From positions 2,108,001 through 2,172,000 of the forward strand of contig NC_067401.1 in NCBI RefSeq assembly GCF_016432865.1: a stretch of 64,000 bases of DNA, in the 5' to 3' direction. Origin of the DNA: Antechinus flavipes. Lineage: Eukaryota. Both the position numbers and the translations under genes were made by a program. Positions 1,444 to 56,100 of the stretch are shown piece by piece (position 1 is the stretch's first letter; every line of letters begins with the position of its first letter). Below the pieces are notes generated by a model. It saw only the letters and a program-made list of their open reading frames with translations. It did no database searches and was not told where the DNA came from.

Positions 1444-12510
<11,067 letters not shown>

Positions 12511-15002: not shown

Positions 15003-15180
15003 CTGGAGGAGCCCGGGAGGAGGAGTCCTGGGGAGGAGCCCTGGAGGAGGAGTGCTGGGGAGGAGCCCTGGAGGAGGAGTGCTGGGGAGGAGCCCTGGAG
15101 GAGGAGTGCTGGGGAGGAGCCCGGGAGGAGGAGTGCTGGGGAGGAGCCCTGGAGGAGGAGTGCTGGGGAGGAGCCCGGGG
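15003..15180. repeat. 27-bp tandem repeat, about 6.5 copies
   Basis: ggaggagccc(t/g)ggaggaggagtgctgg; gives the EEPWRRSAG periodic ORF. Confidence 0.9.
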
Positions 15181-38900: not shown

Positions 38901-41099
38901 GACCCCGAAACCTGCCTTGGGCTCCCCTGCACACACGCAGGAGCGGCAGACTTGGATGCATTTCTTTCCCTCTCCGTCAAATGGGAATTGCCGTAGGCTT
39001 GAGCCCCCCGTGTGGGGACGGTGGGGTGAGATGGGTCAAACCCTTGGCCACCTGGGAGGTGTCTGTGAGTCCCCTACTTTCCCCGGGCCTGCCTGCTGCC
39101 TAGGTCCTCCAGAGGGACCTGTGATCTGTGCTTGATGTTTTTCCAGACGCTCAAGGGAGACTGGGACTCAGAGAAGGGCTCATGCTTAAGAAGGCTCGAG
39201 GAAGAGCTGGCCCAAAAGCACCGGGCAGAGATGGAGAGCGTGCGCGAGGCCCTGAGGGCCCAGTTGGCCGAGCAGAAGGTGGAGCTGGAGAAGATGGCCC
39301 ACGACAAGGCCCAGGCTGAAGGTGGGGCTCCGCAGGGGGCAAGGCGTCGTGGTCCGGTCCCCTGGGCCTGAACCCTTTAGGACCCGTATCTGCAGGGGGG
39401 CGCCCCGATGGAGAGAGCCCGGCCACAAAGGCCCGCGCTCCTGCCCCGGCTGTGGTACCCTGGGCGAGGCCTTCAGCCTCCGGCTGCCTCCATTGCCTCT
39501 CCTGCAATGGAGAGAGTAATGACAGCCGCCTCCCTGGGTCCTTGGGCGGATCCAGTGCCTCATTCTCCCCTTCTCTTCCCTTTCCCTCTGAAAATGAAAT
39601 CGAAAGTGTGATTCTAAGCTTAAATCCCCTTTCCTTTTTATCTTTTAAAATACTAGACCTCATCTCGATGAGAATGTAAATGCCATTTCAGTGTCATTTC
39701 TTCCCTGGATGGGAGGGAGGGAGCCGCTTTCCTGTCTCTGCTCCTGGAGGAGGGTCCGTGGCTCCCCTGGGAAGGCTCTCTTGTCCGGGCCCAATGGGGC
39801 GGCGGGTTCGGGCGGCCGGCTGCGGCCGAGCCCTATGGGGCCAGGCTTGGGGAATGACCTCCCCTTTGGCCTCTTCTCCTGCAGCTGCTCTCAGCAGCCT
39901 TCAGGCCCAGCACCGGGCGGCCATGCAGGACCTTCGCCAGGAGCTCCAGCTTCAGCGTGACCAGTATTTAGAAGACATGGATCTGAAAGTCCGAGAGAAG
40001 CAGCAGGAGGTGGGTGCTGCACGGGGCTTTCAGTCCGGCCTCCCCAGCGGGGAGAGAACCTGGAGTCTCTTTATTTTATTTTTTTTTTTTTAAATAACTT
40101 TCTATTGACAGAACCCATGCCAGGGTAATTTTTTACAACATTATCCCTTGCACTCACTTCTGTTCTGACTTTTCCCCTCCCTCCCTCCACCCCCTCCCCC
40201 AGATGGCAAGCAGTCCTTTACATGTTGAATAGGTTACAGTATATCCTGGATGCAATATATGTGTGCAGAACCGAACAGTTTTCTTGTTGCACAGGGAGAA
40301 TTGGATTCAGAAGGTACAAATAACCCGGGAAGAAAAACAAAAATGTAAATAGTTCACATTCGTTTCCCAGAGTTCTTTCTTTGGGTGCAGCTGCTTTTGT
40401 CCATCATTTATCCATTGAAACTCAGTTAGGTCTCTTTATCGAAGAGATCCACTTCCATCAGAATACATCTTCATACAGTATCGTTGTTGAGGTATAAAAT
40501 GATCTCCTGGTTCTGCTCATTTCACTCAGCATCAGTTCATGTAAGTCTCGCCAGTCCTCTCTGTATTCATCCTGCTGGTCATTTCTTACAGAACAATAAT
40601 ATTCCATAACGTTCATATACCACAGTTTACCCAGCCATTCTCCAATGGATGGGCATCCTTTCATTTTCCAACTTCCGGCCACTACAAACAGGGCCGCCAC
40701 AAACATTTTGGCACATACAGGTCCCTTTCCCTTCTTTAGTATCTCTTTGGGGTATAAGCCCAATAGAAACACTGCTGGATCAAAGGGGATGCACAGTTTG
40801 TTAACTTTTTGGGCATAGTCCTGGAGCCTCTTTGGAACACAGCCTGTCCTGGGGGGGGCCTTTGTTTTGCTGGGGAAGGCTGGCTTCTGGTGTGGGATCA
40901 GCAACTGCTCTGTCCCGTTTCCTCAGATTGGGGTTCGGGCCCTTCTTAGGCCAGGGACTGGCTCCCCATCCTTCAACGTTGATCCTGAGGCTCTCACGGG
41001 ATGTCCACACTGGCCGCCTTCCCAGTTTCTGATACTTGGTGTCAATATTTGTCATCATAGCAGCTGACGTGTGTATGTGGGGTGTGTGAGTGTGAGTAA

Positions 41100-47100: not shown

Positions 47101-50100
47101 GATGTAGACCCGGTAGCCCCGAGTTAGAATTTCTTTCCTCTGATTAGATCTTGGCCCGACTGAGAGCTTTCCTACACTGGTTGCTTTCTGGATGAGGAAG
47201 AAGAAAAGGGGAAAAGCTTGATTCCAATAGCAATTATCAGTTATTAAATAGAAGAGAAGAATCCTAATTTCTCACAAATGTGGGCCCCCAGAATTCTTTG
47301 CTAACAGGTTTGATCCTTCTCGTTGCAGAAGAGCTGTCGTCTCGTTGAAGACCACCAGAAAGAGATAAAGAAGCTAAGAGAAGAAATTCAGCAGCTGATC
47401 CAAAGGAACAAGGACAAAGAAGATGAATGGCAAGTCCAGCGTGGGGATCTCAGCAGGAGAGCCGAAGAGCGACTGGCCGCACTGGCCCTCGAGCTGAACG
47501 GCAAGGCCGAGCGGGAGCAGCGGGCCCTGAGAGAGGCGGCGGAGCTCCGTGTGGTGGAGATGGAGCGGCTCCGAGACCGGCAGGCGGCCGACATCATGAG
47601 GTTGGAGCAGTCCCTGAGGCAGCGGGAGGAGAGCCGGGCCCAAGAGGAGGCTGCCTGGCAAGAGCGGGCAGCTCGGGACCTGGAGGCGGCCAAGGCCCAG
47701 ATGGCCGAAGAGTTGGAGGCGGCCACGCGTAGCCTTCGGGAGGACTGTGCCTTGGAGCTGCAGACAAGCCGAGCAAGGTTGGTGACTGAGGCCCAGGGGC
47801 TTGCTTGGGTACCAAGAGGCCCTTAACCTTGTTTCCGGGCCTCTTCTGCATAGCAAATGGTCTGACGGTCCTTTTGTCTCACGTATCCGATAATTAGCTC
47901 ACAACCCTTGCCCTCTGCTGGTCTGCCGGTCATGGGGGCCAACCCTTTTCAATGCCCAAACAAGTTATACTTTTTTAAGACCAGGGCGCCGGGATTTGGG
48001 CATCAGGGCTCTCTTCCTCAGTGCAGATAGCAGGCACCTTGTCTTCCTCTGATCTGGGAAGGTTGCTGTGCCCCTCTAGAGATGAATCTCTGAGGAGAGA
48101 CCCAAACCTCTAGCAGCATGGGCTGAGCCTGCCTCAGCCCAAACCCAGCTGGCAGAGCCTTGGCAAATGCAAGGCACTTTTGTCAGAGGGCGTATTTTAA
48201 AAAAAAATGCCAATAACTTCTTATTTTTCAAAATACGTACAGAGAGTTTTCAGCATTCACCTTCACATAACCTTGTGTTCCCAATTTTTCTCCCTTCCCT
48301 CCTCCCCTAGATAGCAAGTAATCTTATATAGGTTAAACATATATAGTTCTTCTATACATATTTCCACATTTATCATGCTACATAAGAAAAATCAGATAAA
48401 AAGGGAAAAAAAGAGAAAGAAGGAAAAAAAGCAAACAACAACAACAAAGGTGAGACTATTATGTTATGATCCACATTCAGTTCCCACAGTCCTCTCTGGG
48501 TGTGGATGGCTCTCCATCACAAGTAGGTTGGAATTGGCCTGAATCACCTCATAGTTCATCTGATCATTGTGTAATCTTGTTGCCAGGTACAATGTTCTCT
48601 TTGTTCCACTCGCTTCACTCAGCATCAATTCATGTGAGTCTCTCCAGGTCTTCCTGAAATCATCCTGCCGATTGTTTCTTACAGATCGATAACATTCATA
48701 TGCCACAGTTTATTCAGTCATTCTCCAATTGATGGGCACTCACTCAGTTTCCAGTTCCTCGCTACTACAAGAAGGGCTGCCACAAACCTTTTTGCCCGTG
48801 TGGGTCCCTTTTCCTCCTTTAAGATCTCTCTGGGATACAGGCTCAGTAGGGACACAACTGGATCAAAGGGTATGCAGAGTTTGCTAGCCATTTGGATATA
48901 GTCCCATATCGTTCTCCAGAATGGTTGGATCAGTTCCCAGCTCCACCAACAACGTATTAGAGTTCCAATTTTCCCACGTTTCCTCCAACATTTATCATTA
49001 TCTTTTCCTGTCATCTTAGCCAGTCTGAGAGGTGTTAGCGGTACCACAGAGTTAAGATGCAAATCTTATGAATATTGATTTAGGGCATTTTTTCATTATA
49101 AGTATAGATGCTTTTATTTCTTCATCTGAAAATTGTTCACATCCTTTCACCATTTATCAGTTGGAGAGTTACTTGTCCTTCTTAAAAATGAGTTGGTTCT
49201 CTTTGTTTTAGAAACGAAGCCTCTATCATAAACCTTGGATGTAAAAAGTTTTTCCCAGTTTCCTAATCTTGGCTGCATTGGTTTTGTTTGTTCAAGAACT
49301 TTTTAATATAATCAGAATTATCCATTTTGCGTTTCGTCATGTTCCCTAGTTCCTTTTTGACTGTGAATTCCTTCCTCCTCCAGAGATCTGAGAGGTAGTT
49401 TGGTCCTTGTTCTCCTAATTTGCTTATACCATCACCCTTTATGTCTAAATCATGGCCCCATCTCAACCTTATCTTAATATAGGGGTGTTAGGTGTGGGTC
49501 AGTGCCTCGTTTCTGCCATGCTAGCTTCCAATTTCCCCAGCAATTTTTATCAAATAATGAGTTCTTATTCCAAAAGCTGGAGTCTTTGGGTTTTTCAAAC
49601 ACTAGATTATTATCGTTGTTGACTATTTTGTGAACCTAATCTATTCCCCCAAGCCACTACTCTCTTACAAGTGGTTTTGATGACCGCCGTTTTATCCTAA
49701 ATCTGGTATTTTAGGTCTGGTACGGCTAGGCCATCTTTATTTGCATTTTTTTTTTTTCATCGATTCCCTCAATTCTTGATCTTTTCTTCCAGCTGAATTT
49801 TAGGATTTTTTTCTAGCTTTATAAAGCAATTAATTTCTTGGCAGTTTGATTGGCATGGCACTGAAGAAGTAGGTTAATTTCAATAGAATTGTCCTTTTTA
49901 TTACATTGGCTCTGATGAGCATTTTTAAGGATCTTCTCTGCCTGGAGGAGTTGATGTCACACGCCTGCTTGTGTTGCTGGGTATGGTTGTTGGTTCATAA
50001 GAAATGGGAAGTTGTAGAAGGGAGATAGATCAAAAAGAGAGCGTCTTGTTTTATGAAGTACCCTGAAGTTTGGAGAATGCGTTACAAATCTCTCGTGAGA

Positions 50101-53100
50101 TTCTCATTGTGACTGTGGGAGGGATGGGCTGTTATTATCCCCATTCGACAGATGAGGCAGATAGGTGAAGTATCACCGGTAAGCGTTTGAGGCGTCCCGA
50201 CTTGGGGTCCAGCTTCTTTTTCACTGCACGCCAACTGCTTCCATGATCAGGAAGGGCCTCCTGGAAAAGGCGGCATTTAAGAGCATTTCAGGTGATATAA
50301 GGAGAGACCCAGCAGGGGCCCAGGTGGCAGAGGGCGTGCTGAGGAACAGAGTTCGGCTGAATTGTCGTGAGCATCAAGGAGAGCAAAGTATAGCGAGTCT
50401 GCAGAGCTCGGTGGGGAGCTGGCGTTGAAGGCCTTGAAATGCTAAACACAGGGTTTTATGTTTGATCTGAGAGTCATCGCACTCCATTGTTGTATGACCC
50501 GAGCATGTCCGGGTTTGAAGAAAATCCCTTTGGCAACTTTGTGGACCACGAACTAGCCTAGAGGGAGCCTTAAAGCCGACAGACCCATGGGGCAGTGTTT
50601 GGGGGCCACCATACTTCTGGCTTCCCAAAGAATAACATACTGACTTCTTGTTAGCGTTGTTCCGTGTTGTAGCGCATTTTTATTTATCCAAGCATTCCCA
50701 ATCACTCTGGGAGCAGGTTTCTTGGGGAGGTTTTCCGGAGGCAGCTTTAGTTTCAGTTGAAAGTAATAATCACCTCAAATGCAGCCAAGTGTTAAAAGTT
50801 CAGATCTTTTATTGCTTCCTCCAAAGTAGCCCGGTTAGTTTTCTTGGTGGCCTGTCTCTCTGCTTGGTTCCAAGAGCTCCCTCTGGCTATCTGCTAAATT
50901 AGGCCACTGACTTATCACTTTGTAAGGATTCCAACAACATTAGCTTCGGGTTCCGTCTTGCCAGGGGTTCTGTTGGTCTGTGCCAGTGGGGGACCCCTGA
51001 ACTCGGAGCGGCACAGGGTTGACAGGGTGCCAAGAAGGGCTGGCTCCACAGGTGTGGAGGAGGAGCCTGTGGCCCCGACAAGGTTTGGGGCAGGTTGTTC
51101 TGGGGCGTAAGGGACAACGAGTCAGTGGCACTGAGGTTGGGAACCTGGATCCCTGGAAGGAAGATGACACCCTGGGTAGGATGAAAGTTCTGTGGAGATA
51201 GTCAGGTGGTTTGTCTGAGAGAGAGAACCAGAAGGAAGGCAGGCAGGAGGCAGGCAGGCTGCGGTGGGCAGGGCCGATTGTGTTAGAGACGGGAAGGAAG
51301 CTTAGTGTAGGATTTACCAAAAGTTGGGATGCAGAATCCCCAGAGGAGAAGGGGCAGCAGGGTGTGAGAGTTTGTTCTCCTGGGCGAAGGAAGCAGTGGT
51401 TCCACGTCCCTGGGAGGTAGTCTGGGTGTCGGAAGTACCTGCCCCGCAGCTGACATTGGCAGCCCACGGGTTGCAGAGGGTGGCGGTTCTTCCTTTGCTT
51501 TTTCACACGAGTTCTGTCCTTTCTCTGGCCAACTTGTCAGCCACCCGCCTGCTGCTGTCCCTGTGCTGGGCTCCACCAGCTGAGGCTGCAGTTCTGGGAG
51601 AGCTGGTACAGTGGACGGAGCCCTGGGCTTGGAATCGGGAAGGCCTGAGTTCCGATATGGCCTCGGCCCCTGGATCTGCCTGGCTCCGTGTCCCCGATTG
51701 CAAGGCAGTTCCTTCCTTCAAGGTTGTGAGGATCAGACAAAATTATATTTGGAAGGTATTTAGTTTAACGTGGTGCCTGGAGCGTAGTAGGCTCTTAGTA
51801 AAGCCCTGGGCCCGTTCCCGTCCCTACCCAAGCCTCCTCAAGGAGCTTGGTAGCAGAGTGGGGTAGAATTGAGTGAGGGCTGACACTTCCTCCGTTCAGT
51901 GAAGTCCTGAAACTTCAGCTTCTTCAAACCTTTCGGACTTGGTGGTTTGTGGCCGCTTGCTCTGAAATGTTCCCAGAGAATGGCCTCCGCGTGTGACCTT
52001 CGAGGTGCCTTAAAGGCAGGTCAGCAACTAGAGGCGGCCCTGGGGCTTAGAGGCAGCATTTGGGCCAGGTCAAGGCCACTGCTTGGGGTTCCAGGCCCAG
52101 ATCCTGGACACAGCCAATCCCCTCAGGAGTTCCCACCTACTTAGGACGCCCCATTTATAGTGTTTGTGCCCTTTATGTTTTATTTAGATTCTTGGAAGAG
52201 CAGAAAGAAATGACTCAGAAATTCACAGAGAAACAAGATGCTCTCTTCAGGGAACTGCAGGAGAAGCATGCTGGTGAACTCCAGCTGCAGAAGCAGCAGA
52301 CCGAGTCCCTGACCACTGAGCTGCAGACCCAGCACCGGGGGGAGATGGACGCCCTCAGGACTTCCTTACAGAGCCAACACCAGACACAGCTGGATGCCCG
52401 GGTCGCTAAGCTGCAGACCCAGCACCAGGAGGAGATGGATGCCCTCAGGGTTTCTCTACAGAGCCAACACCAGACACAGCTGGAAGCCAGAGTGGCCGAC
52501 CTGCAGAGCCAGCACCAGGGAGAGATGGACGCCCTCAGGACTTCCTTACAGAGCCTACACCGGACACAGCTGGATGCCCAGGTTGCTAAGCTGCAGACCC
52601 AGCACCAGGAGGAGATGGATGCCCTTAGGACTTCCTTACAGAGCCAACACCGGGCACAGCTGGAAGCCAGAGTGGCCGACCTGCAGAGCCAGCACCAGGG
52701 AGAGATGGACGCCCTCAGGACTTCCTTACAGAGCCAACACCGGGCACAGCTGGAAGCCAGAGTGGCTGACCTGCAGAGCCAGCACCAGGGAGAGATGGAC
52801 GCCCTTAGGACTTCCTTACAGAGCCAACACCAGACACAGCTGGATGCTCAGGTCGCTAAGCTGCAGACCCAGCACCGGGAGGAGATGGATGCCCTCAGGA
52901 CTTCCTTACAGAGCCAACACCGGGCACAGCTGGAAGCCAGAGTGGCCGACCTGCAGACCCAGCATGTTGCAGAAATGAGCCACCTGGAAGCCAAGCACTT
53001 GTCAAATCTGGATTCTTTGGAGTCTGGTTACCTGGCTGAGATTCAGACCATGCAGGAAGAGCACAGCCACGCTCTGGAAGGGCTCCGGGTGAGGCTCGAG

Positions 53101-56100
53101 GAGCAGCTGCAGGCGAAGGAAGCTGAGCACAAGGCGGGCCTGGCGCAGGAGACCGAGAAGCACCAGCGAGAGCTGCAGCAGGCCCAGGAAAGCCTCAGAA
53201 TTGAGATGACCACTAATCATATTGAAAAACTGAAATCACTGGCCACGGAGCTACAAGATGCACATCAGGTAAGTGCTGTGGGCCCAGCAGGCTCGGGTCT
53301 CGGGCCACCTTGCCCACCTGTGGAATGGCTCACCGGATATGGGTCAGAGCAGCGCAGGGAACTGGTGGGCACACATTGGTTATGTCAGCCTGGCCTTGCT
53401 TAGTGTAAACTTTTTGTAAGGAGAAAGTGATTTAATTTTATCACATCAAACTGGGCAAATAATTACTTGTTGGCCTGAAAAATCAGTGCACTGGGTTTGA
53501 GGTCCGAGCTGCCCATTCTCGAAGAGAGATCAGATTCAAAAGCAGAAACTGCGTCCGGGCGTTAGACAAAATTGTGAAGGCTGCAAAGTCCCGGAGCTCC
53601 TGCCCTGCTTCTGTTATCCTGTTCAACTCAGTTAATGGTTCAACATTTTATAAATCCCCTCGAGTCCATGCTTGTATCCTTCCTCAGGGTGCCCTTTGAC
53701 CCACTCTTCAGCCTCAGCCCCGGGTGGGGCTGGTGTTGCTTTGAATTGCTGGAAAGAGAAGCTATTGGTAAGAAGTGGGATTCTTCTCGTGTCCTCCAAA
53801 TCCCCCGGGCAGGCTGGTGTCTTGTTGCTAGGATGAAATGTCCCAGCAGACGGTTGAGAGCTTTACTCTCCTTGACTACGGCCTCCTGGGAGATGCTCGA
53901 CCACATCCCCTTTCCTAACAGGGTCCCGACAAGCATGCATGTGAGTCTGGGCTCGAGGCCCGGACAAGTGAGCTCCTTCTCTCGGGAACAGATAGCTGTA
54001 ATTCTGACGGGGGTAGTGGGAGCGCCACGATGCGGGTCGGGTCACCGATGAGCTCCCGTGAGCTCACTTAGTCTACAATGAAATTGGCTGCCAGTTTAAA
54101 GGCAAGCAAACCAGGAAGTCCTTATTCTGGAGGAAAAAGACAAAACAGGTGAAAGGAGAAGGAGCTGGAAAAACTATTTCTTTCATGAATATTAGCTAGA
54201 AAACAGCCTTAAATCTTTTCTTTGTTGGGGAGTCAGCTCTGGTCCTTGGTCAGGGCTCCACTCTCCAGAACTCTGGCCGGCATAAGGACGGGGCTCTTTC
54301 CAATGGTCCCTCTTGTAGGAGGACCTGCAGATGGCCCTTCACAACCAGAGGTGTTTGCTGGAGGAAGAAAATCACAAGGCTCTGGACAGATTGGGCGAAG
54401 AGGCCCTCCGCATGGAGGAGCAGCACCGAGGGGCCCTTCAGGAACTCAAGGACATCCACGTGGCCGAGCTCGAGAAGCAGAAGGCCAAGGCTGGCCAGCA
54501 GCTCCAAGAAGAGCTGGGCAGACTGAGGGCCCAGCACCAGCGGGAGCGAGAGGTGAGCCTTGGGGAGGGGTGGGCCGAGAGCCCTTGGACCTGCAAGGGG
54601 CTCATCTCTTCCCCCATCTGGCCCGCTCTGCGGGTCAGTGATTTGCTCATCTGGAGATGTTCCAAGCTGCAGAGTCTCTGAAGCATGGTGCTGCTGCTGC
54701 GCCAGCCTTAGAGAGGGCCCTGTTCCTGGGGGAGGGAGGTGAGCGGGCAGGCCTTAGAGACGGGGTGGCTGGCAGGGATGCCCAGGAGTGCTTGAGGGAA
54801 CATTCTAGACCTCTAGCTGGGCTCAGCTTCTTCTTGACCTGGGCCATGGCCCAAGCCTCCGCCTTCAGCACACTCTTGGCCCTTCCTCGAAGGTGTGTCT
54901 GGAGCTGTCCCACATAAGCTGGGGCCTTTTTAAAGCCGTCCTCGAGCTGCCTTACTTGGTTCTGGGCCCTCTCAGCTTTTTTTGCCTATAAAAGTGAGGA
55001 AATTGGCGGCCGTAGCTCTTTCAGCTTGAATCTCGTCTTTTAGATCGTTCAGCCTTTGGGAATTAGTGACACGGGAGTGTCATGGGGCTGACCCAGACAT
55101 ATTTAAATGTGCATTTAGGGTTAAATGTGTGTGCGGTCCTGCTGGATTTTCTTGCGCAGGGGCGCCTTTCTCTTTATGTCTTAGATCTTGTTCACCAAAC
55201 AGTAGTTGACACTTCTGCTCTAATTCTCAATTTCCAAGGGTGTTCCATTGCTCAGCATGTCATTTTCTAAGAAGTCTAATTGTGGCTCATTTTTGCCGTG
55301 AACACTTGGAGACTGGGCAGGAAAGGCAAGGTGGCCTCTGGGTCTTTTTCGCCTTTTGTTACTATTTTAGCGAATCTTGTCGAGAATCCTGTTGCTATTT
55401 TGATCAGAATTTTATTGAATCCTTTCCTTTTCCTTGCATCTCTTTCTTTTTCATCTCTTTGATTTTTCTGTGACCTTCATTTCAGATAGAATTCCTCCCC
55501 TCTCTCCCTACCCTTGATGAGCCATCCTGGATAACAGAATAAGAGGGAATAAGAACCATTTCAAAAAGGGCATCAGAATGGTAGAGCCCGGCTCGATCTG
55601 GGCACTGCTCTTTCCACCGACACTGGCTGGACGGCCCCCACTTCTGGCATGGCTGCCCTCAATCGTGCCAGCTTCTCTGAAGCCTGACCGCATTCCCCTC
55701 GTTTCAGGAGCTGTGGCTCTCAAGGCTTTCTAGGAATCTTGGTGGGGATGGAGAGTGAGGGAAGGTCTCCAGTCTCCATCTTTGGGTTTCATCCCCATTT
55801 CCTGGTTCTCACTTGGGAAAATGGGTTTATCTATAGATTTCCCAGCACATCCCTGAAGTGCTCCCTCTGGCCTGCTCCTCCTTCCTCTCTTTTACCTCCA
55901 TTCCCTCCAGCCTACTAACAGGCCCGGATCAGGCCCATCCTGAAGAAACCTTTACTTGCCGCCTCTGTCCCTACTTACTTTGGCCTGCGATCTCTCCTGC
56001 CCTTTGAGCCAAATTCCTCTCAGAGCCCGTCTCCAGCAACCCTCCATTCGCTCTCATGCCCTTCTTGGCCCCTCACGGGGCCCACCCGGCCCTCTCCGCA

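What the first reader, a model, noticed from the sequence alone, without database searches (positions are those of the whole stretch)
52321..52964. Lineage-specific 7x30-aa coding repeat with His-containing pentadecad periodicity
Seen: seven 90-bp units such as LQTQHQEEMDALRTS-LQSQHQTQLEARVAD, each made of two 15-aa halves beginning LQ(T/S)QH. Core L/H/M/L/V residues are spaced 4-4-3-4 or 4-4-4-3. Unit ends alternate DA(R/Q)VAK and EARVAD (order A B A B B A B), implying a 180-bp dimer intermediate. The exon is 1081 nt versus about 556 nt in human (recalled), which has one unit. Known: 15/4 periodicity favours right-handed rather than canonical left-handed coiled coils. Inference: about 180 extra helical residues (about 27 nm at 0.15 nm per residue) could lengthen the radial PCM scaffold, with regular His layers that may be pH- or metal-sensitive; probably a coding VNTR.
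Basis: partly seen in the sequence, partly recalled or inferred. Interest (0 to 1): 0.72.

Follow-up and report, generated by a model that had tools for sequence, protein, structure and literature searches.

The report
Expanded 15-residue helix repeat in pericentrin
A coding exon of the centrosome scaffold gene pericentrin in a small marsupial (Antechinus flavipes) carries seven in-frame copies of a 30-residue helical unit that placental mammals, birds, reptiles and the platypus have only once; the unit is an ancient, histidine-marked 15-residue pattern that frogs and some fishes have also multiplied on their own.

Summary
Window 52321-52950 is seven head-to-tail 90-bp units (80-98% identical) inside a 1081-nt exon (52188-53268, + strand). 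Its translation is identical to RefSeq Antechinus flavipes pericentrin isoforms.

It is not species-specific. Other Australian and Chilean marsupials have 5-9 units, while brushtail possum and Gracilinanus have one. Monodelphis multiplied only the second 15-residue half. All 122 placental, bird, reptile, platypus and Gracilinanus proteins checked keep one fixed-length copy.

The 15-residue pattern is ancestral, not created by the repeat. Amniotes have five in-register 15-mers (L1, H5, hydrophobic 9 and 12/13) before the conserved HLSNLDSLES motif. Marsupials amplified the third and fourth. In single-copy species this block already has a hydrophobic period of 3.74 residues and almost no heptad signal. 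His at position 5 is kept in 35 of 36 distinct sequences for three of the five 15-mers.

Frogs (31 copies in Discoglossus) and elopomorph fishes expanded the same block independently. AlphaFold2 predicts continuous helix.

Verdict: a real, undescribed but ordinary kind of coding repeat expansion, with a moderately interesting structural twist.

The parts
52188..53268 (+). Pericentrin coding exon, 1081 nt. It starts with the third base of a split Arg codon, and 360 full codons run from 52189.
   Evidence: AG at 52186-7 and GT at 53269-70. Only one frame is open. The translation is found exactly in A. flavipes pericentrin-like isoforms X3, X9 and X10. Junctions to the flanking exons match the RefSeq protein.
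52255..52320 (+). Ancestral 15-mers 1 and 2 of the block (LQEKH...SLTTE). Dasyurids have 22 residues here where other marsupials have 30.
   Evidence: Register comparison across species.
52321..52950 (+). Seven tandem 90-bp units, each encoding two 15-residue halves (210 residues in all). This is an amplification of ancestral 15-mers 3 and 4.
   Evidence: TRF result. Units and identity matrix. Variable sites and pN/pS of about 0.3. Two unit types in the shifted phase.
52321..52410 (+). Unit 1 (tail DARVAK, type A).
52411..52500 (+). Unit 2 (tail EARVAD, type B).
52501..52590 (+). Unit 3 (tail DAQVAK, type A).
52591..52680 (+). Unit 4 (type B).
52681..52770 (+). Unit 5 (type B).
52771..52860 (+). 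Unit 6 (type A).
52861..52950 (+). Unit 7 (type B; 98% identical to unit 4).
52951..52995 (+). Ancestral fifth 15-mer (LQTQHVAEMSHLEAK), single copy in all species. TRF counts its first 14 nt as the 0.2 extra copy.
52996..53025 (+). Conserved anchor HLSNLDSLES, used to put all orthologues in register.
52402..52581 (+). 180-nt interval (two units) missing from RefSeq isoform X5. It is the only GT...AG placement within a 50-nt window of equivalent deletion positions.
47758..47777 (+). End of the upstream pericentrin exon (...LQTSRA + AG), which supplies the first two bases of the split codon.
54319..54354 (+). Start of the next pericentrin exon (EDLQMALHNQRC...), after AG at 54317-8.

Best explanation
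The array is an in-frame minisatellite-type amplification inside a constitutive exon of pericentrin (PCNT) of Antechinus flavipes.

Shown:
- All amniote pericentrins have, just before the conserved HLSNLDSLES motif, five consecutive in-register 15-residue units. Each has Leu at 1, His at 5 (Gln in unit 4 of most species), a hydrophobic residue at 9 and Leu/Val at 12/13.
- In Australidelphian marsupials the pair of units 3+4 (30 residues, 90 bp) was copied head to tail. Copy number then drifted to between 1 and 9 in different lineages, and Antechinus has 7.
- Every expansion keeps multiples of 15 residues, so the register with the flanking ancestral units is never broken.

Inferred:
- The copies arose by unequal recombination or replication slippage between units.
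- The array is translated as one continuous alpha-helix. It extends a local non-heptad (15/4 = 3.75 residues per turn) coiled-coil segment from 75 to about 247 residues, adding up to about 27 nm of rod and 12 more His positions.
- By coiled-coil theory such a segment would be right-handed or nearly straight.
- The most likely consequence is a tolerated change in the rod length and valency of this scaffold protein, not a new activity.
For: Gene and species:
- The best match in 1.84 billion proteins is tammar wallaby pericentrin (E 1e-115), and the other hits are named pericentrin.
- The exon translation is 100% identical to A. flavipes isoforms X3, X9 and X10.

Repeat structure:
- TRF result and unit matrix.
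- Two unit types are 91-98% identical within a type and 82-86% between types.

Selection:
- The frame is intact in 8 marsupial species that carry arrays.
- Synonymous differences exceed non-synonymous ones in nearly all unit pairs, with pN/pS of about 0.3.

Phylogenetic distribution:
- Copy numbers range from 1 to 9.
- 122 proteins have a fixed 94 or 98 residues to the anchor: placentals, birds, reptiles, platypus and the opossum Gracilinanus.

Ancestral pentadecad:
- Five in-register 15-mers are seen in turtle, platypus, Gracilinanus and Trichosurus; elephant shows four in register.
- In 36 distinct single-copy blocks the hydrophobic period peaks at 3.74, with power 1.22 at 3.75 against 0.06 at 3.5 (shuffles give 0.19).
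- In turtle pericentrin this block is the top 3.75-periodic window of 304, while the whole protein favours 3.5.
- His at position 5 is kept in 35/36 blocks for units 2, 3 and 5.
- A His-His lag of 15 is the strongest autocorrelation in elephant, turtle and duck pericentrin, with z of 3.8-5.1.

Helix: AlphaFold2 from a single sequence gives helix over 2-168 and 173-359, with mean pLDDT 77.

Theory: periodicity above 3.63 gives right-handed twist, and 15/4 is the pentadecad (PMC8016460).

Independent expansions of the same block occur in frogs and elopomorph fishes.
Against: - No read-level check of the copy number was possible.
- No oligomer model or experimental structure exists: the PDB search gave no hit, and the AlphaFold2 monomer folds back on itself at 169-172, which says nothing about supercoil handedness.
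- The putative core is thin, with three bulky hydrophobics plus His per 15 residues.
- Position 9 of the first half is Thr in koala and Dromiciops.
- With Ala included, or on the Kyte-Doolittle scale, the 3.75 peak is not dominant in the array.
- In a perfect 15-residue repeat, 3.75 is the only harmonic near helical pitch, so the array alone cannot prove it. The single-copy orthologues carry that argument.
- The 36 blocks are homologous, not independent.
Confidence: 0.8

Rival explanations
1. The array matters as a Gln-rich, multivalent interaction or condensation module, not as a rigid rod. Extra copies would add binding valency to the part of pericentrin that drives phase separation or partner recruitment, and the conserved His and Gln positions would face a partner, not a coiled-coil core.
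For: - The array is 21% Gln with few Lys.
- It lies at the N-terminal edge of the conserved middle region. In human PCNT, residues 854-1960 of that region drive condensation and recruit PCM clients (PMC8349556). The elephant unit is at 836-880.
- Many non-core positions (Q2, Q4, D10, R13, S15) are as invariant as the putative core.
- The hydrophobic seam is sparse.
Against: - Invariance of the non-core positions may only reflect recent duplication.
- The strict 15-residue register and the 3.74 hydrophobic period conserved for over 300 million years argue for a structural helix-helix seam.
- No partner is known for this segment.
Confidence: 0.25
2. The array is selectively neutral length variation, a coding VNTR tolerated in a long rod protein, and has no functional consequence. 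Copy number simply drifts.
For: - Copy number ranges from 1 to 9 among marsupials with no evident pattern, and Trichosurus and Gracilinanus have 1.
- Sarcophilus models differ, 7 against 6.
- A. flavipes isoform X5 lacks exactly two units, and the deletion endpoints lie in a 50-nt stretch shared by units. That is what unequal crossover would produce.
- 180 residues is only about 4% of a protein of roughly 4500 residues.
Against: - pN/pS of about 0.3 between units and no frame-breaking change in any species show that the sequence of each unit is constrained once present.
- Four independent vertebrate lineages expanded this block and not others, which hints at more than chance.
Confidence: 0.35
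3. Part of the array is removed from some transcripts as an intron within the exon (52402-52581, GT...AG), so the repeat provides regulated isoform length.
For: RefSeq isoform X5 lacks exactly this 60-residue stretch, and a GT-AG placement exists.
Against: - The donor (CGG|GTCGCT) and acceptor (no pyrimidine tract) are weak.
- Any 180-nt deletion allele, or a reverse-transcriptase template switch between units, would be aligned as this same GT-AG gap, because 50 positions are equivalent.
Confidence: 0.1
4. The seven-copy count is an assembly artefact, from mis-expansion or collapse of a repeat.
For: - No reads could be laid.
- The older Sarcophilus models have one copy fewer than the newer one, in a stretch of three units that are identical at the protein level.
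Against: - All seven Antechinus units differ from each other at the DNA level (2-20% divergence), and the 630-bp array is within a single long read.
- Eight marsupial species, annotated from separate genome assemblies, show arrays of similar structure.
Confidence: 0.07

Closest known systems
Pericentrin (PCNT/kendrin) of placental mammals, birds and reptiles
   Same: Same gene and same exon. The flanks are the same: exon start FLEE..., the anchor HLSNLDSLES and the exon end ...LQDAHQ. The same five-unit 15-residue His block is present.
   Different: These species have one copy of units 3+4, where Antechinus has seven. The exon is 360 codons here against 188 in elephant.
Pentadecad (15/4) right-handed coiled-coil segments, such as the stalks of the trimeric autotransporters YadA and SadA (PMC8016460)
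   Same: A 15-residue sequence period with hydrophobic positions spaced 4-4-3-4, giving 3.75 residues per turn.
   Different: Those are bacterial trimers with solved structures. Here the oligomeric state and handedness are unknown, a conserved His occupies one seam position, and the protein is a vertebrate centrosome scaffold. This is a resemblance in sequence periodicity only.
Coding minisatellites (VNTRs) in repeat-bearing structural proteins
   Same: Head-to-tail in-frame units of tens of base pairs. Two interspersed variant types are present, edge units are more conserved than inner ones, and copy number differs between related species.
   Different: Within-species polymorphism, the defining property of a VNTR, could not be tested here.
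Independent expansions of the same block in anuran and elopomorph-fish pericentrins
   Same: Same position relative to the ...LDSLES/...MDTLES anchor and the same L-x3-H-x2-E 15-mer.
   Different: The amplified unit is a single 15-mer: 31 in-register copies in Discoglossus and a long array in Rhinophrynus too. Albula and Aldrovandia each have roughly eight. In Australidelphian marsupials the unit is a 30-residue pair.

Membership tests
Pericentrin (PCNT) orthologue | Sequence identity with annotated pericentrin over the exon | tested here: met
   The exon translation is found exactly in A. flavipes pericentrin-like isoforms X3, X9 and X10. The best hit in the whole library is tammar pericentrin, E 1e-115.
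Pericentrin (PCNT) orthologue | C-terminal PACT centrosome-targeting domain in the same protein | tested here: met
   PF10495 matches residues 4360-4438 of Sarcophilus pericentrin and is precomputed for the A. flavipes isoforms. The domain lies outside this window.
Pericentrin (PCNT) orthologue | Conserved exon boundaries and anchor motif | tested here: met
   The junctions ...LQTSRAR|FLEE and ...LQDAHQ|EDLQ match the RefSeq protein. HLSNLDSLE is present in 147 pericentrins.
Coding minisatellite / VNTR | Tandem head-to-tail units, in frame | tested here: met
Coding minisatellite / VNTR | Copy number differs between related species | tested here: met
   1 to 9 units in ten marsupials.
Coding minisatellite / VNTR | Copy number polymorphic within a species | not testable with these tools
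There are only hints: isoform X5 lacks two units, and Sarcophilus models have 7 against 6.
Pentadecad (15/4) coiled coil | Hydrophobic periodicity near 3.75 and not 3.5 | tested here: met
   In the array, power is 5.5 at 3.75 against 0.02 at 3.5 for bulky hydrophobics. In 36 single-copy orthologue blocks the peak is 3.74, with power 1.22 against 0.06.
Pentadecad (15/4) coiled coil | Alpha-helical conformation | tested here: met
   The AlphaFold2 single-sequence model is helical over 2-168 and 173-359, with pLDDT 77. This is a prediction only.
Pentadecad (15/4) coiled coil | Oligomeric helix bundle with right-handed supercoil | not testable with these tools
   No multimer prediction and no model coordinates are available, and there is no homologue in the PDB.
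Canonical heptad coiled coil | Hydrophobic periodicity of 3.5 | tested here: not met
   Power at 3.5 is about 0.02-0.06, below the shuffled level of 0.19.
Single alpha-helix (SAH) domain | Glu/Lys/Arg-rich composition with i to i+4 salt bridges | tested here: not met
   Composition is Lys 1.4%, Glu 6.7%, Arg 8.6% and Gln 21%.

The most novel reading that the evidence does not exclude
Vertebrate pericentrin contains an ancient, conserved right-handed (15/4) coiled-coil segment with a ladder of His residues at one seam position. This segment would act as an adjustable spacer or ruler that marsupials, frogs and elopomorph fishes lengthened independently, by about 170 to 450 residues. The His ladder would make its pairing sensitive to pH or metal ions. 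Natural copy-number variants would then give a direct test of whether pericentrin rod length sets PCM dimensions.
Probability: 0.12. Interest if true: 0.7.

Novelty: new member of a known kind. Interest (0 to 1): 0.42.

Why it matters
Pericentrin is thought to span the interphase PCM radially, with its C-terminus at the centriole wall. Whether its length sets PCM size is hard to test with engineered deletions.

Marsupials (1 to 9 units), frogs and some fishes provide natural in-register length variants of one defined helical segment.

The comparison also identifies a short pericentrin block that has kept a non-heptad 3.74-residue period and a His at a fixed position across amniotes. My literature searches found no paper describing it. 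One paper notes only unspecified clade-specific insertions (PMC8349556).

From my own knowledge, not tested here: PtK cells, a standard mitosis model, come from a marsupial, so the question can be approached experimentally.

On present evidence the array itself is an ordinary repeat expansion with no demonstrated function.

Tried and rejected
- Pfam on the exon and on the large upstream exon gave nothing above threshold. PF27598, listed for orthologues, is AKAP9_coil_N and is absent from the local Pfam copy.
- The PDB sequence search gave no hit.
- DNA of other marsupial PCNT genes could not be fetched. The Sarcophilus product is not on record and the Trichosurus gene is over 100 kb. Orthology of units and dating at the DNA level were therefore not done.
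Exons were handled one by one by reference and compared with database proteins.
- No human sequence was used.
- Position entropies over 96 marsupial 15-mers were computed but rejected as evidence of selection, because the copies are recent duplicates.
- A mobile element or dispersed satellite was rejected: the unit occurs only inside this exon.
- SAH domain and canonical heptad coil were rejected.
- Fold search on the monomer hairpin model was judged uninformative and not run.
- Whether the paralogue AKAP9 has the same five-unit block was not tested. No AKAP9 sequence came up among the 131 hits.
Full report
**1. What is in the sequence**

- Tandem Repeats Finder reports a 90-bp period, 7.2 copies, at 52316-52964. 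Matches are 86% and the score is 951. There is a weak 45-bp sub-period (60% matches) and a 270-bp super-period.
- The array lies in a 1081-nt exon, 52188-53268 on the + strand. AG sits at 52186-7 and GT at 53269-70. Only the frame starting at 52189 is open.
- Cutting from 52321 gives seven 90-bp units. Each encodes two 15-residue halves that begin LQ(T/S)QH.
- The tails are DA(R/Q)VAK in units 1, 3 and 6 and EARVAD in units 2, 4, 5 and 7.
- Units are 80-98% identical and no two are the same.
- The unit is found nowhere else in the window.

**2. Gene and species**

- A full-library protein search with the exon translation gave tammar wallaby pericentrin as best hit (E 1e-115). Pericentrins of a frog, colugo, elephant, platypus, a sparrow and a turtle followed.
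- I used the costly search because the exon is a piece of a protein of roughly 4500 residues, which the length-limited word search cannot reach. The claim also rests on absence of the array in relatives.
- The 360-residue translation occurs exactly in RefSeq Antechinus flavipes 'pericentrin-like' isoforms X3, X9 and X10. The window is therefore A. flavipes PCNT.
- The splice junctions to the exon ending at 47777 and the exon starting at 54319 reproduce the RefSeq protein.

**3. Distribution**

A word search seeded from the tammar protein returned many full-length pericentrins. I placed them in register on the conserved anchor HLSNLDSLE.

| Species | 30-residue units |
|---|---|
| Antechinus | 7 |
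| Sarcophilus | 7 (6 in older UniProt models) |
| Sminthopsis | 9 |
| Macrotis | 6 |
| Notamacropus | 6 |
| Phascolarctos | 5 |
| Dromiciops | 5, plus two recombinant 15-residue halves |
| Trichosurus | 1 |
| Gracilinanus | 1 |
| Monodelphis | about ten copies of the second 15-residue half only |

- Of 147 pericentrins with both anchors, 122 have a fixed distance from exon start to anchor. Placentals have 94 residues; birds, reptiles, platypus and the opossum Gracilinanus have 98. Apart from the bonefish Albula (146 residues), only marsupials are longer.
It is shared and variable within Australidelphia, not species-specific.
- Frogs carry very long arrays of a single 15-mer at the same place. 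Discoglossus has 31 in-register copies, and Rhinophrynus has a long array as well.
- The elopomorph fishes Albula and Aldrovandia each have roughly eight copies.
- The different unit structure in each group points to independent expansions.

**4. The pentadecad is ancestral**

- In turtle, platypus, Gracilinanus and Trichosurus, the 75 residues before the anchor form five in-register 15-mers. Elephant shows four in register, because placentals are 4 residues shorter here.
- The pattern is L at position 1, H at 5, E at 8, I/L/M at 9 and L at 12 (V at 13 in the fourth unit).
- Marsupials amplified the third and fourth 15-mers.
- In 36 distinct single-copy blocks the hydrophobic period peaks at 3.74 residues, and the interquartile range is also 3.74. 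Mean power is 1.22 at 3.75 against 0.06 at 3.5, and shuffles give 0.19.
- In turtle pericentrin this block is the strongest 3.75-periodic window of 304, while the protein as a whole favours 3.5.
- His at position 5 is kept in 35 of 36 blocks for units 2, 3 and 5. Unit 4 is Gln in 24 and His in 9.
- A His-His spacing of 15 is the top autocorrelation lag over the whole pericentrin of elephant, turtle and duck (z 3.8-5.1). It is weaker in platypus and absent in donkey (Equus asinus).
- Similar short 15-mer blocks occur elsewhere in the protein, for example elephant 121-180 and 488-548.
It is an old local property of pericentrin and not a by-product of the expansion. That matters because in a perfect 15-residue repeat, 3.75 is the only harmonic near helical pitch.
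- Periodicities above 3.63 imply right-handed twist, and 15/4 is the pentadecad (PMC8016460).

**5. Internal history of the array**

Shifting the phase by one half (tail plus next head) splits the six internal units cleanly.
- Alpha units are 91-93% alike and beta units 94-98% alike. Alpha against beta is 82-86%. The order is alpha beta alpha beta beta alpha.
- Self-identity is 0.85 at lag 90, 0.90 at lag 180 and 0.91 at lag 270. A 180-bp dimer step fits the first four units but is not the only possible route.
- Between units, synonymous differences exceed non-synonymous ones (pN/pS about 0.3). Between-type pS is 0.15-0.5 and within-type pS is 0.05-0.26.
- The two types are therefore probably older than the last duplications, and each unit's sequence is under purifying selection. 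Counts are small, about 20 synonymous sites per pair.
- D-type and E-type tails occur in all three dasyurids, and a DAQVAK tail also occurs in Macrotis. This suggests the split predates the dasyurid radiation.

**6. Structure**

- AlphaFold2 from the single sequence predicts helix over residues 2-168 and 173-359 (mean pLDDT 77). It folds back at 169-172, as is usual for a lone coiled-coil chain.
- This excludes 'disordered' as far as a prediction can, but it says nothing about oligomer state or handedness.
- No relative has a solved structure, and Pfam finds nothing in the exon.
- The composition (Gln 21%, Lys 1.4%) does not fit a single-alpha-helix domain.
- There are weak points. The seam is thin. 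Position 9 of the first half is Thr in koala and Dromiciops. With Ala included, or on the Kyte-Doolittle scale, the 3.75 peak is not dominant in the array.

**7. VNTR question**

- Two hints exist. RefSeq isoform X5 of A. flavipes lacks exactly two units (60 residues). Fifty deletion positions are equivalent because units 2 and 4 share their first bases, and one of them (52402-52581) is GT...AG.
- That pattern fits a 5-unit allele, a template switch during cDNA synthesis, or a weak intra-exon intron. The data cannot separate these.
- Sarcophilus models have 7 or 6 units. The difference lies in a run of three units identical at the protein level, where a short-read assembly could collapse a copy.

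**8. Function**

- *Shown:* the array is coding, in frame, constrained, in register with an ancient non-heptad block, and variable among lineages.
- *Inferred:* it extends a helical rod by 180 residues relative to single-unit species (172 net relative to elephant). As a straight helix that is about 27 nm.
- *Not supported by any test here:* an effect on PCM radius, or pH or metal sensing by the His ladder.
The array is therefore a small part of the length difference.
- The segment sits at the N-terminal border of the conserved middle region, which in human PCNT (854-1960) drives condensation (PMC8349556). A valency or interaction role is a live alternative.

**9. Novelty**

- Searches for pericentrin together with pentadecad gave 0 papers. 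A search combining pericentrin with tandem repeat, copy number and coiled-coil gave nothing relevant.
- One paper notes only unspecified 'clade-specific insertions' in the N-terminal part.
- The array is already present in predicted RefSeq proteins.
- It is a new member of a known kind: an in-frame minisatellite expansion of a coiled-coil repeat.
- The added point is that the amplified module is a conserved 15/4 His block, and that at least four vertebrate lineages expanded it independently.

**10. Limits**

- No human sequence was used.
- No N stretch was involved.
- Other marsupial DNA could not be fetched.

Noticed in passing
P0026 (platypus golgin B1 / giantin), residues 362-467: Another long coiled-coil protein carries tandem 15-residue units of the same form (LEQKH/LEQEH ... 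LEARVS) with His at position 5. It may be convergent, or a more general motif of long Golgi and centrosome rods.
   Followed up: no
P0024 (moray eel Gymnothorax javanicus, 735 aa), residues about 590-700: A different 15-mer block is expanded to about seven copies. It is the one matching elephant 136-165 (...HALELEALRLS), so more than one His-15-mer block of this protein family is prone to amplification.
   Followed up: partly
window 52255-52320: The three dasyurids have 22 residues where other marsupials have 30, an 8-residue loss in ancestral 15-mers 1-2. This is the only place where the 15-residue register is broken near the array.
   Followed up: partly
P0179 (Monodelphis pericentrin), just before the last 15-mer: One 11-residue piece (LQDRHRAQVAV) sits among 15-mers. 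Rhinophrynus similarly intersperses 14-residue pieces among its 15-mers.
   Followed up: no
window 8918-9782, 2542-3408, 11223-11617, 15005-15176, 1-393: Several other GC-rich minisatellites lie upstream of the first PCNT exons noted by this scan (from about 22 kb). Periods are 21/42, 24/133, 20/61, 27 and 25/98 bp. They create long spurious ORFs on both strands.
   Followed up: no
   Followed up: no
window 40458-40904 (-) and 48718-49062 (-): These ORFs have the look of LINE-1 ORF2 C-terminal fragments (...CIPFDP...LYPKEILK...) inside PCNT introns. I recognised them from memory and ran no search.
   Followed up: no
window 52394-52978 (+), second frame: A 194-codon ORF overlaps the array in another frame. 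It is a by-product of a stop-free repeat and not evidence of a second gene.
   Followed up: partly
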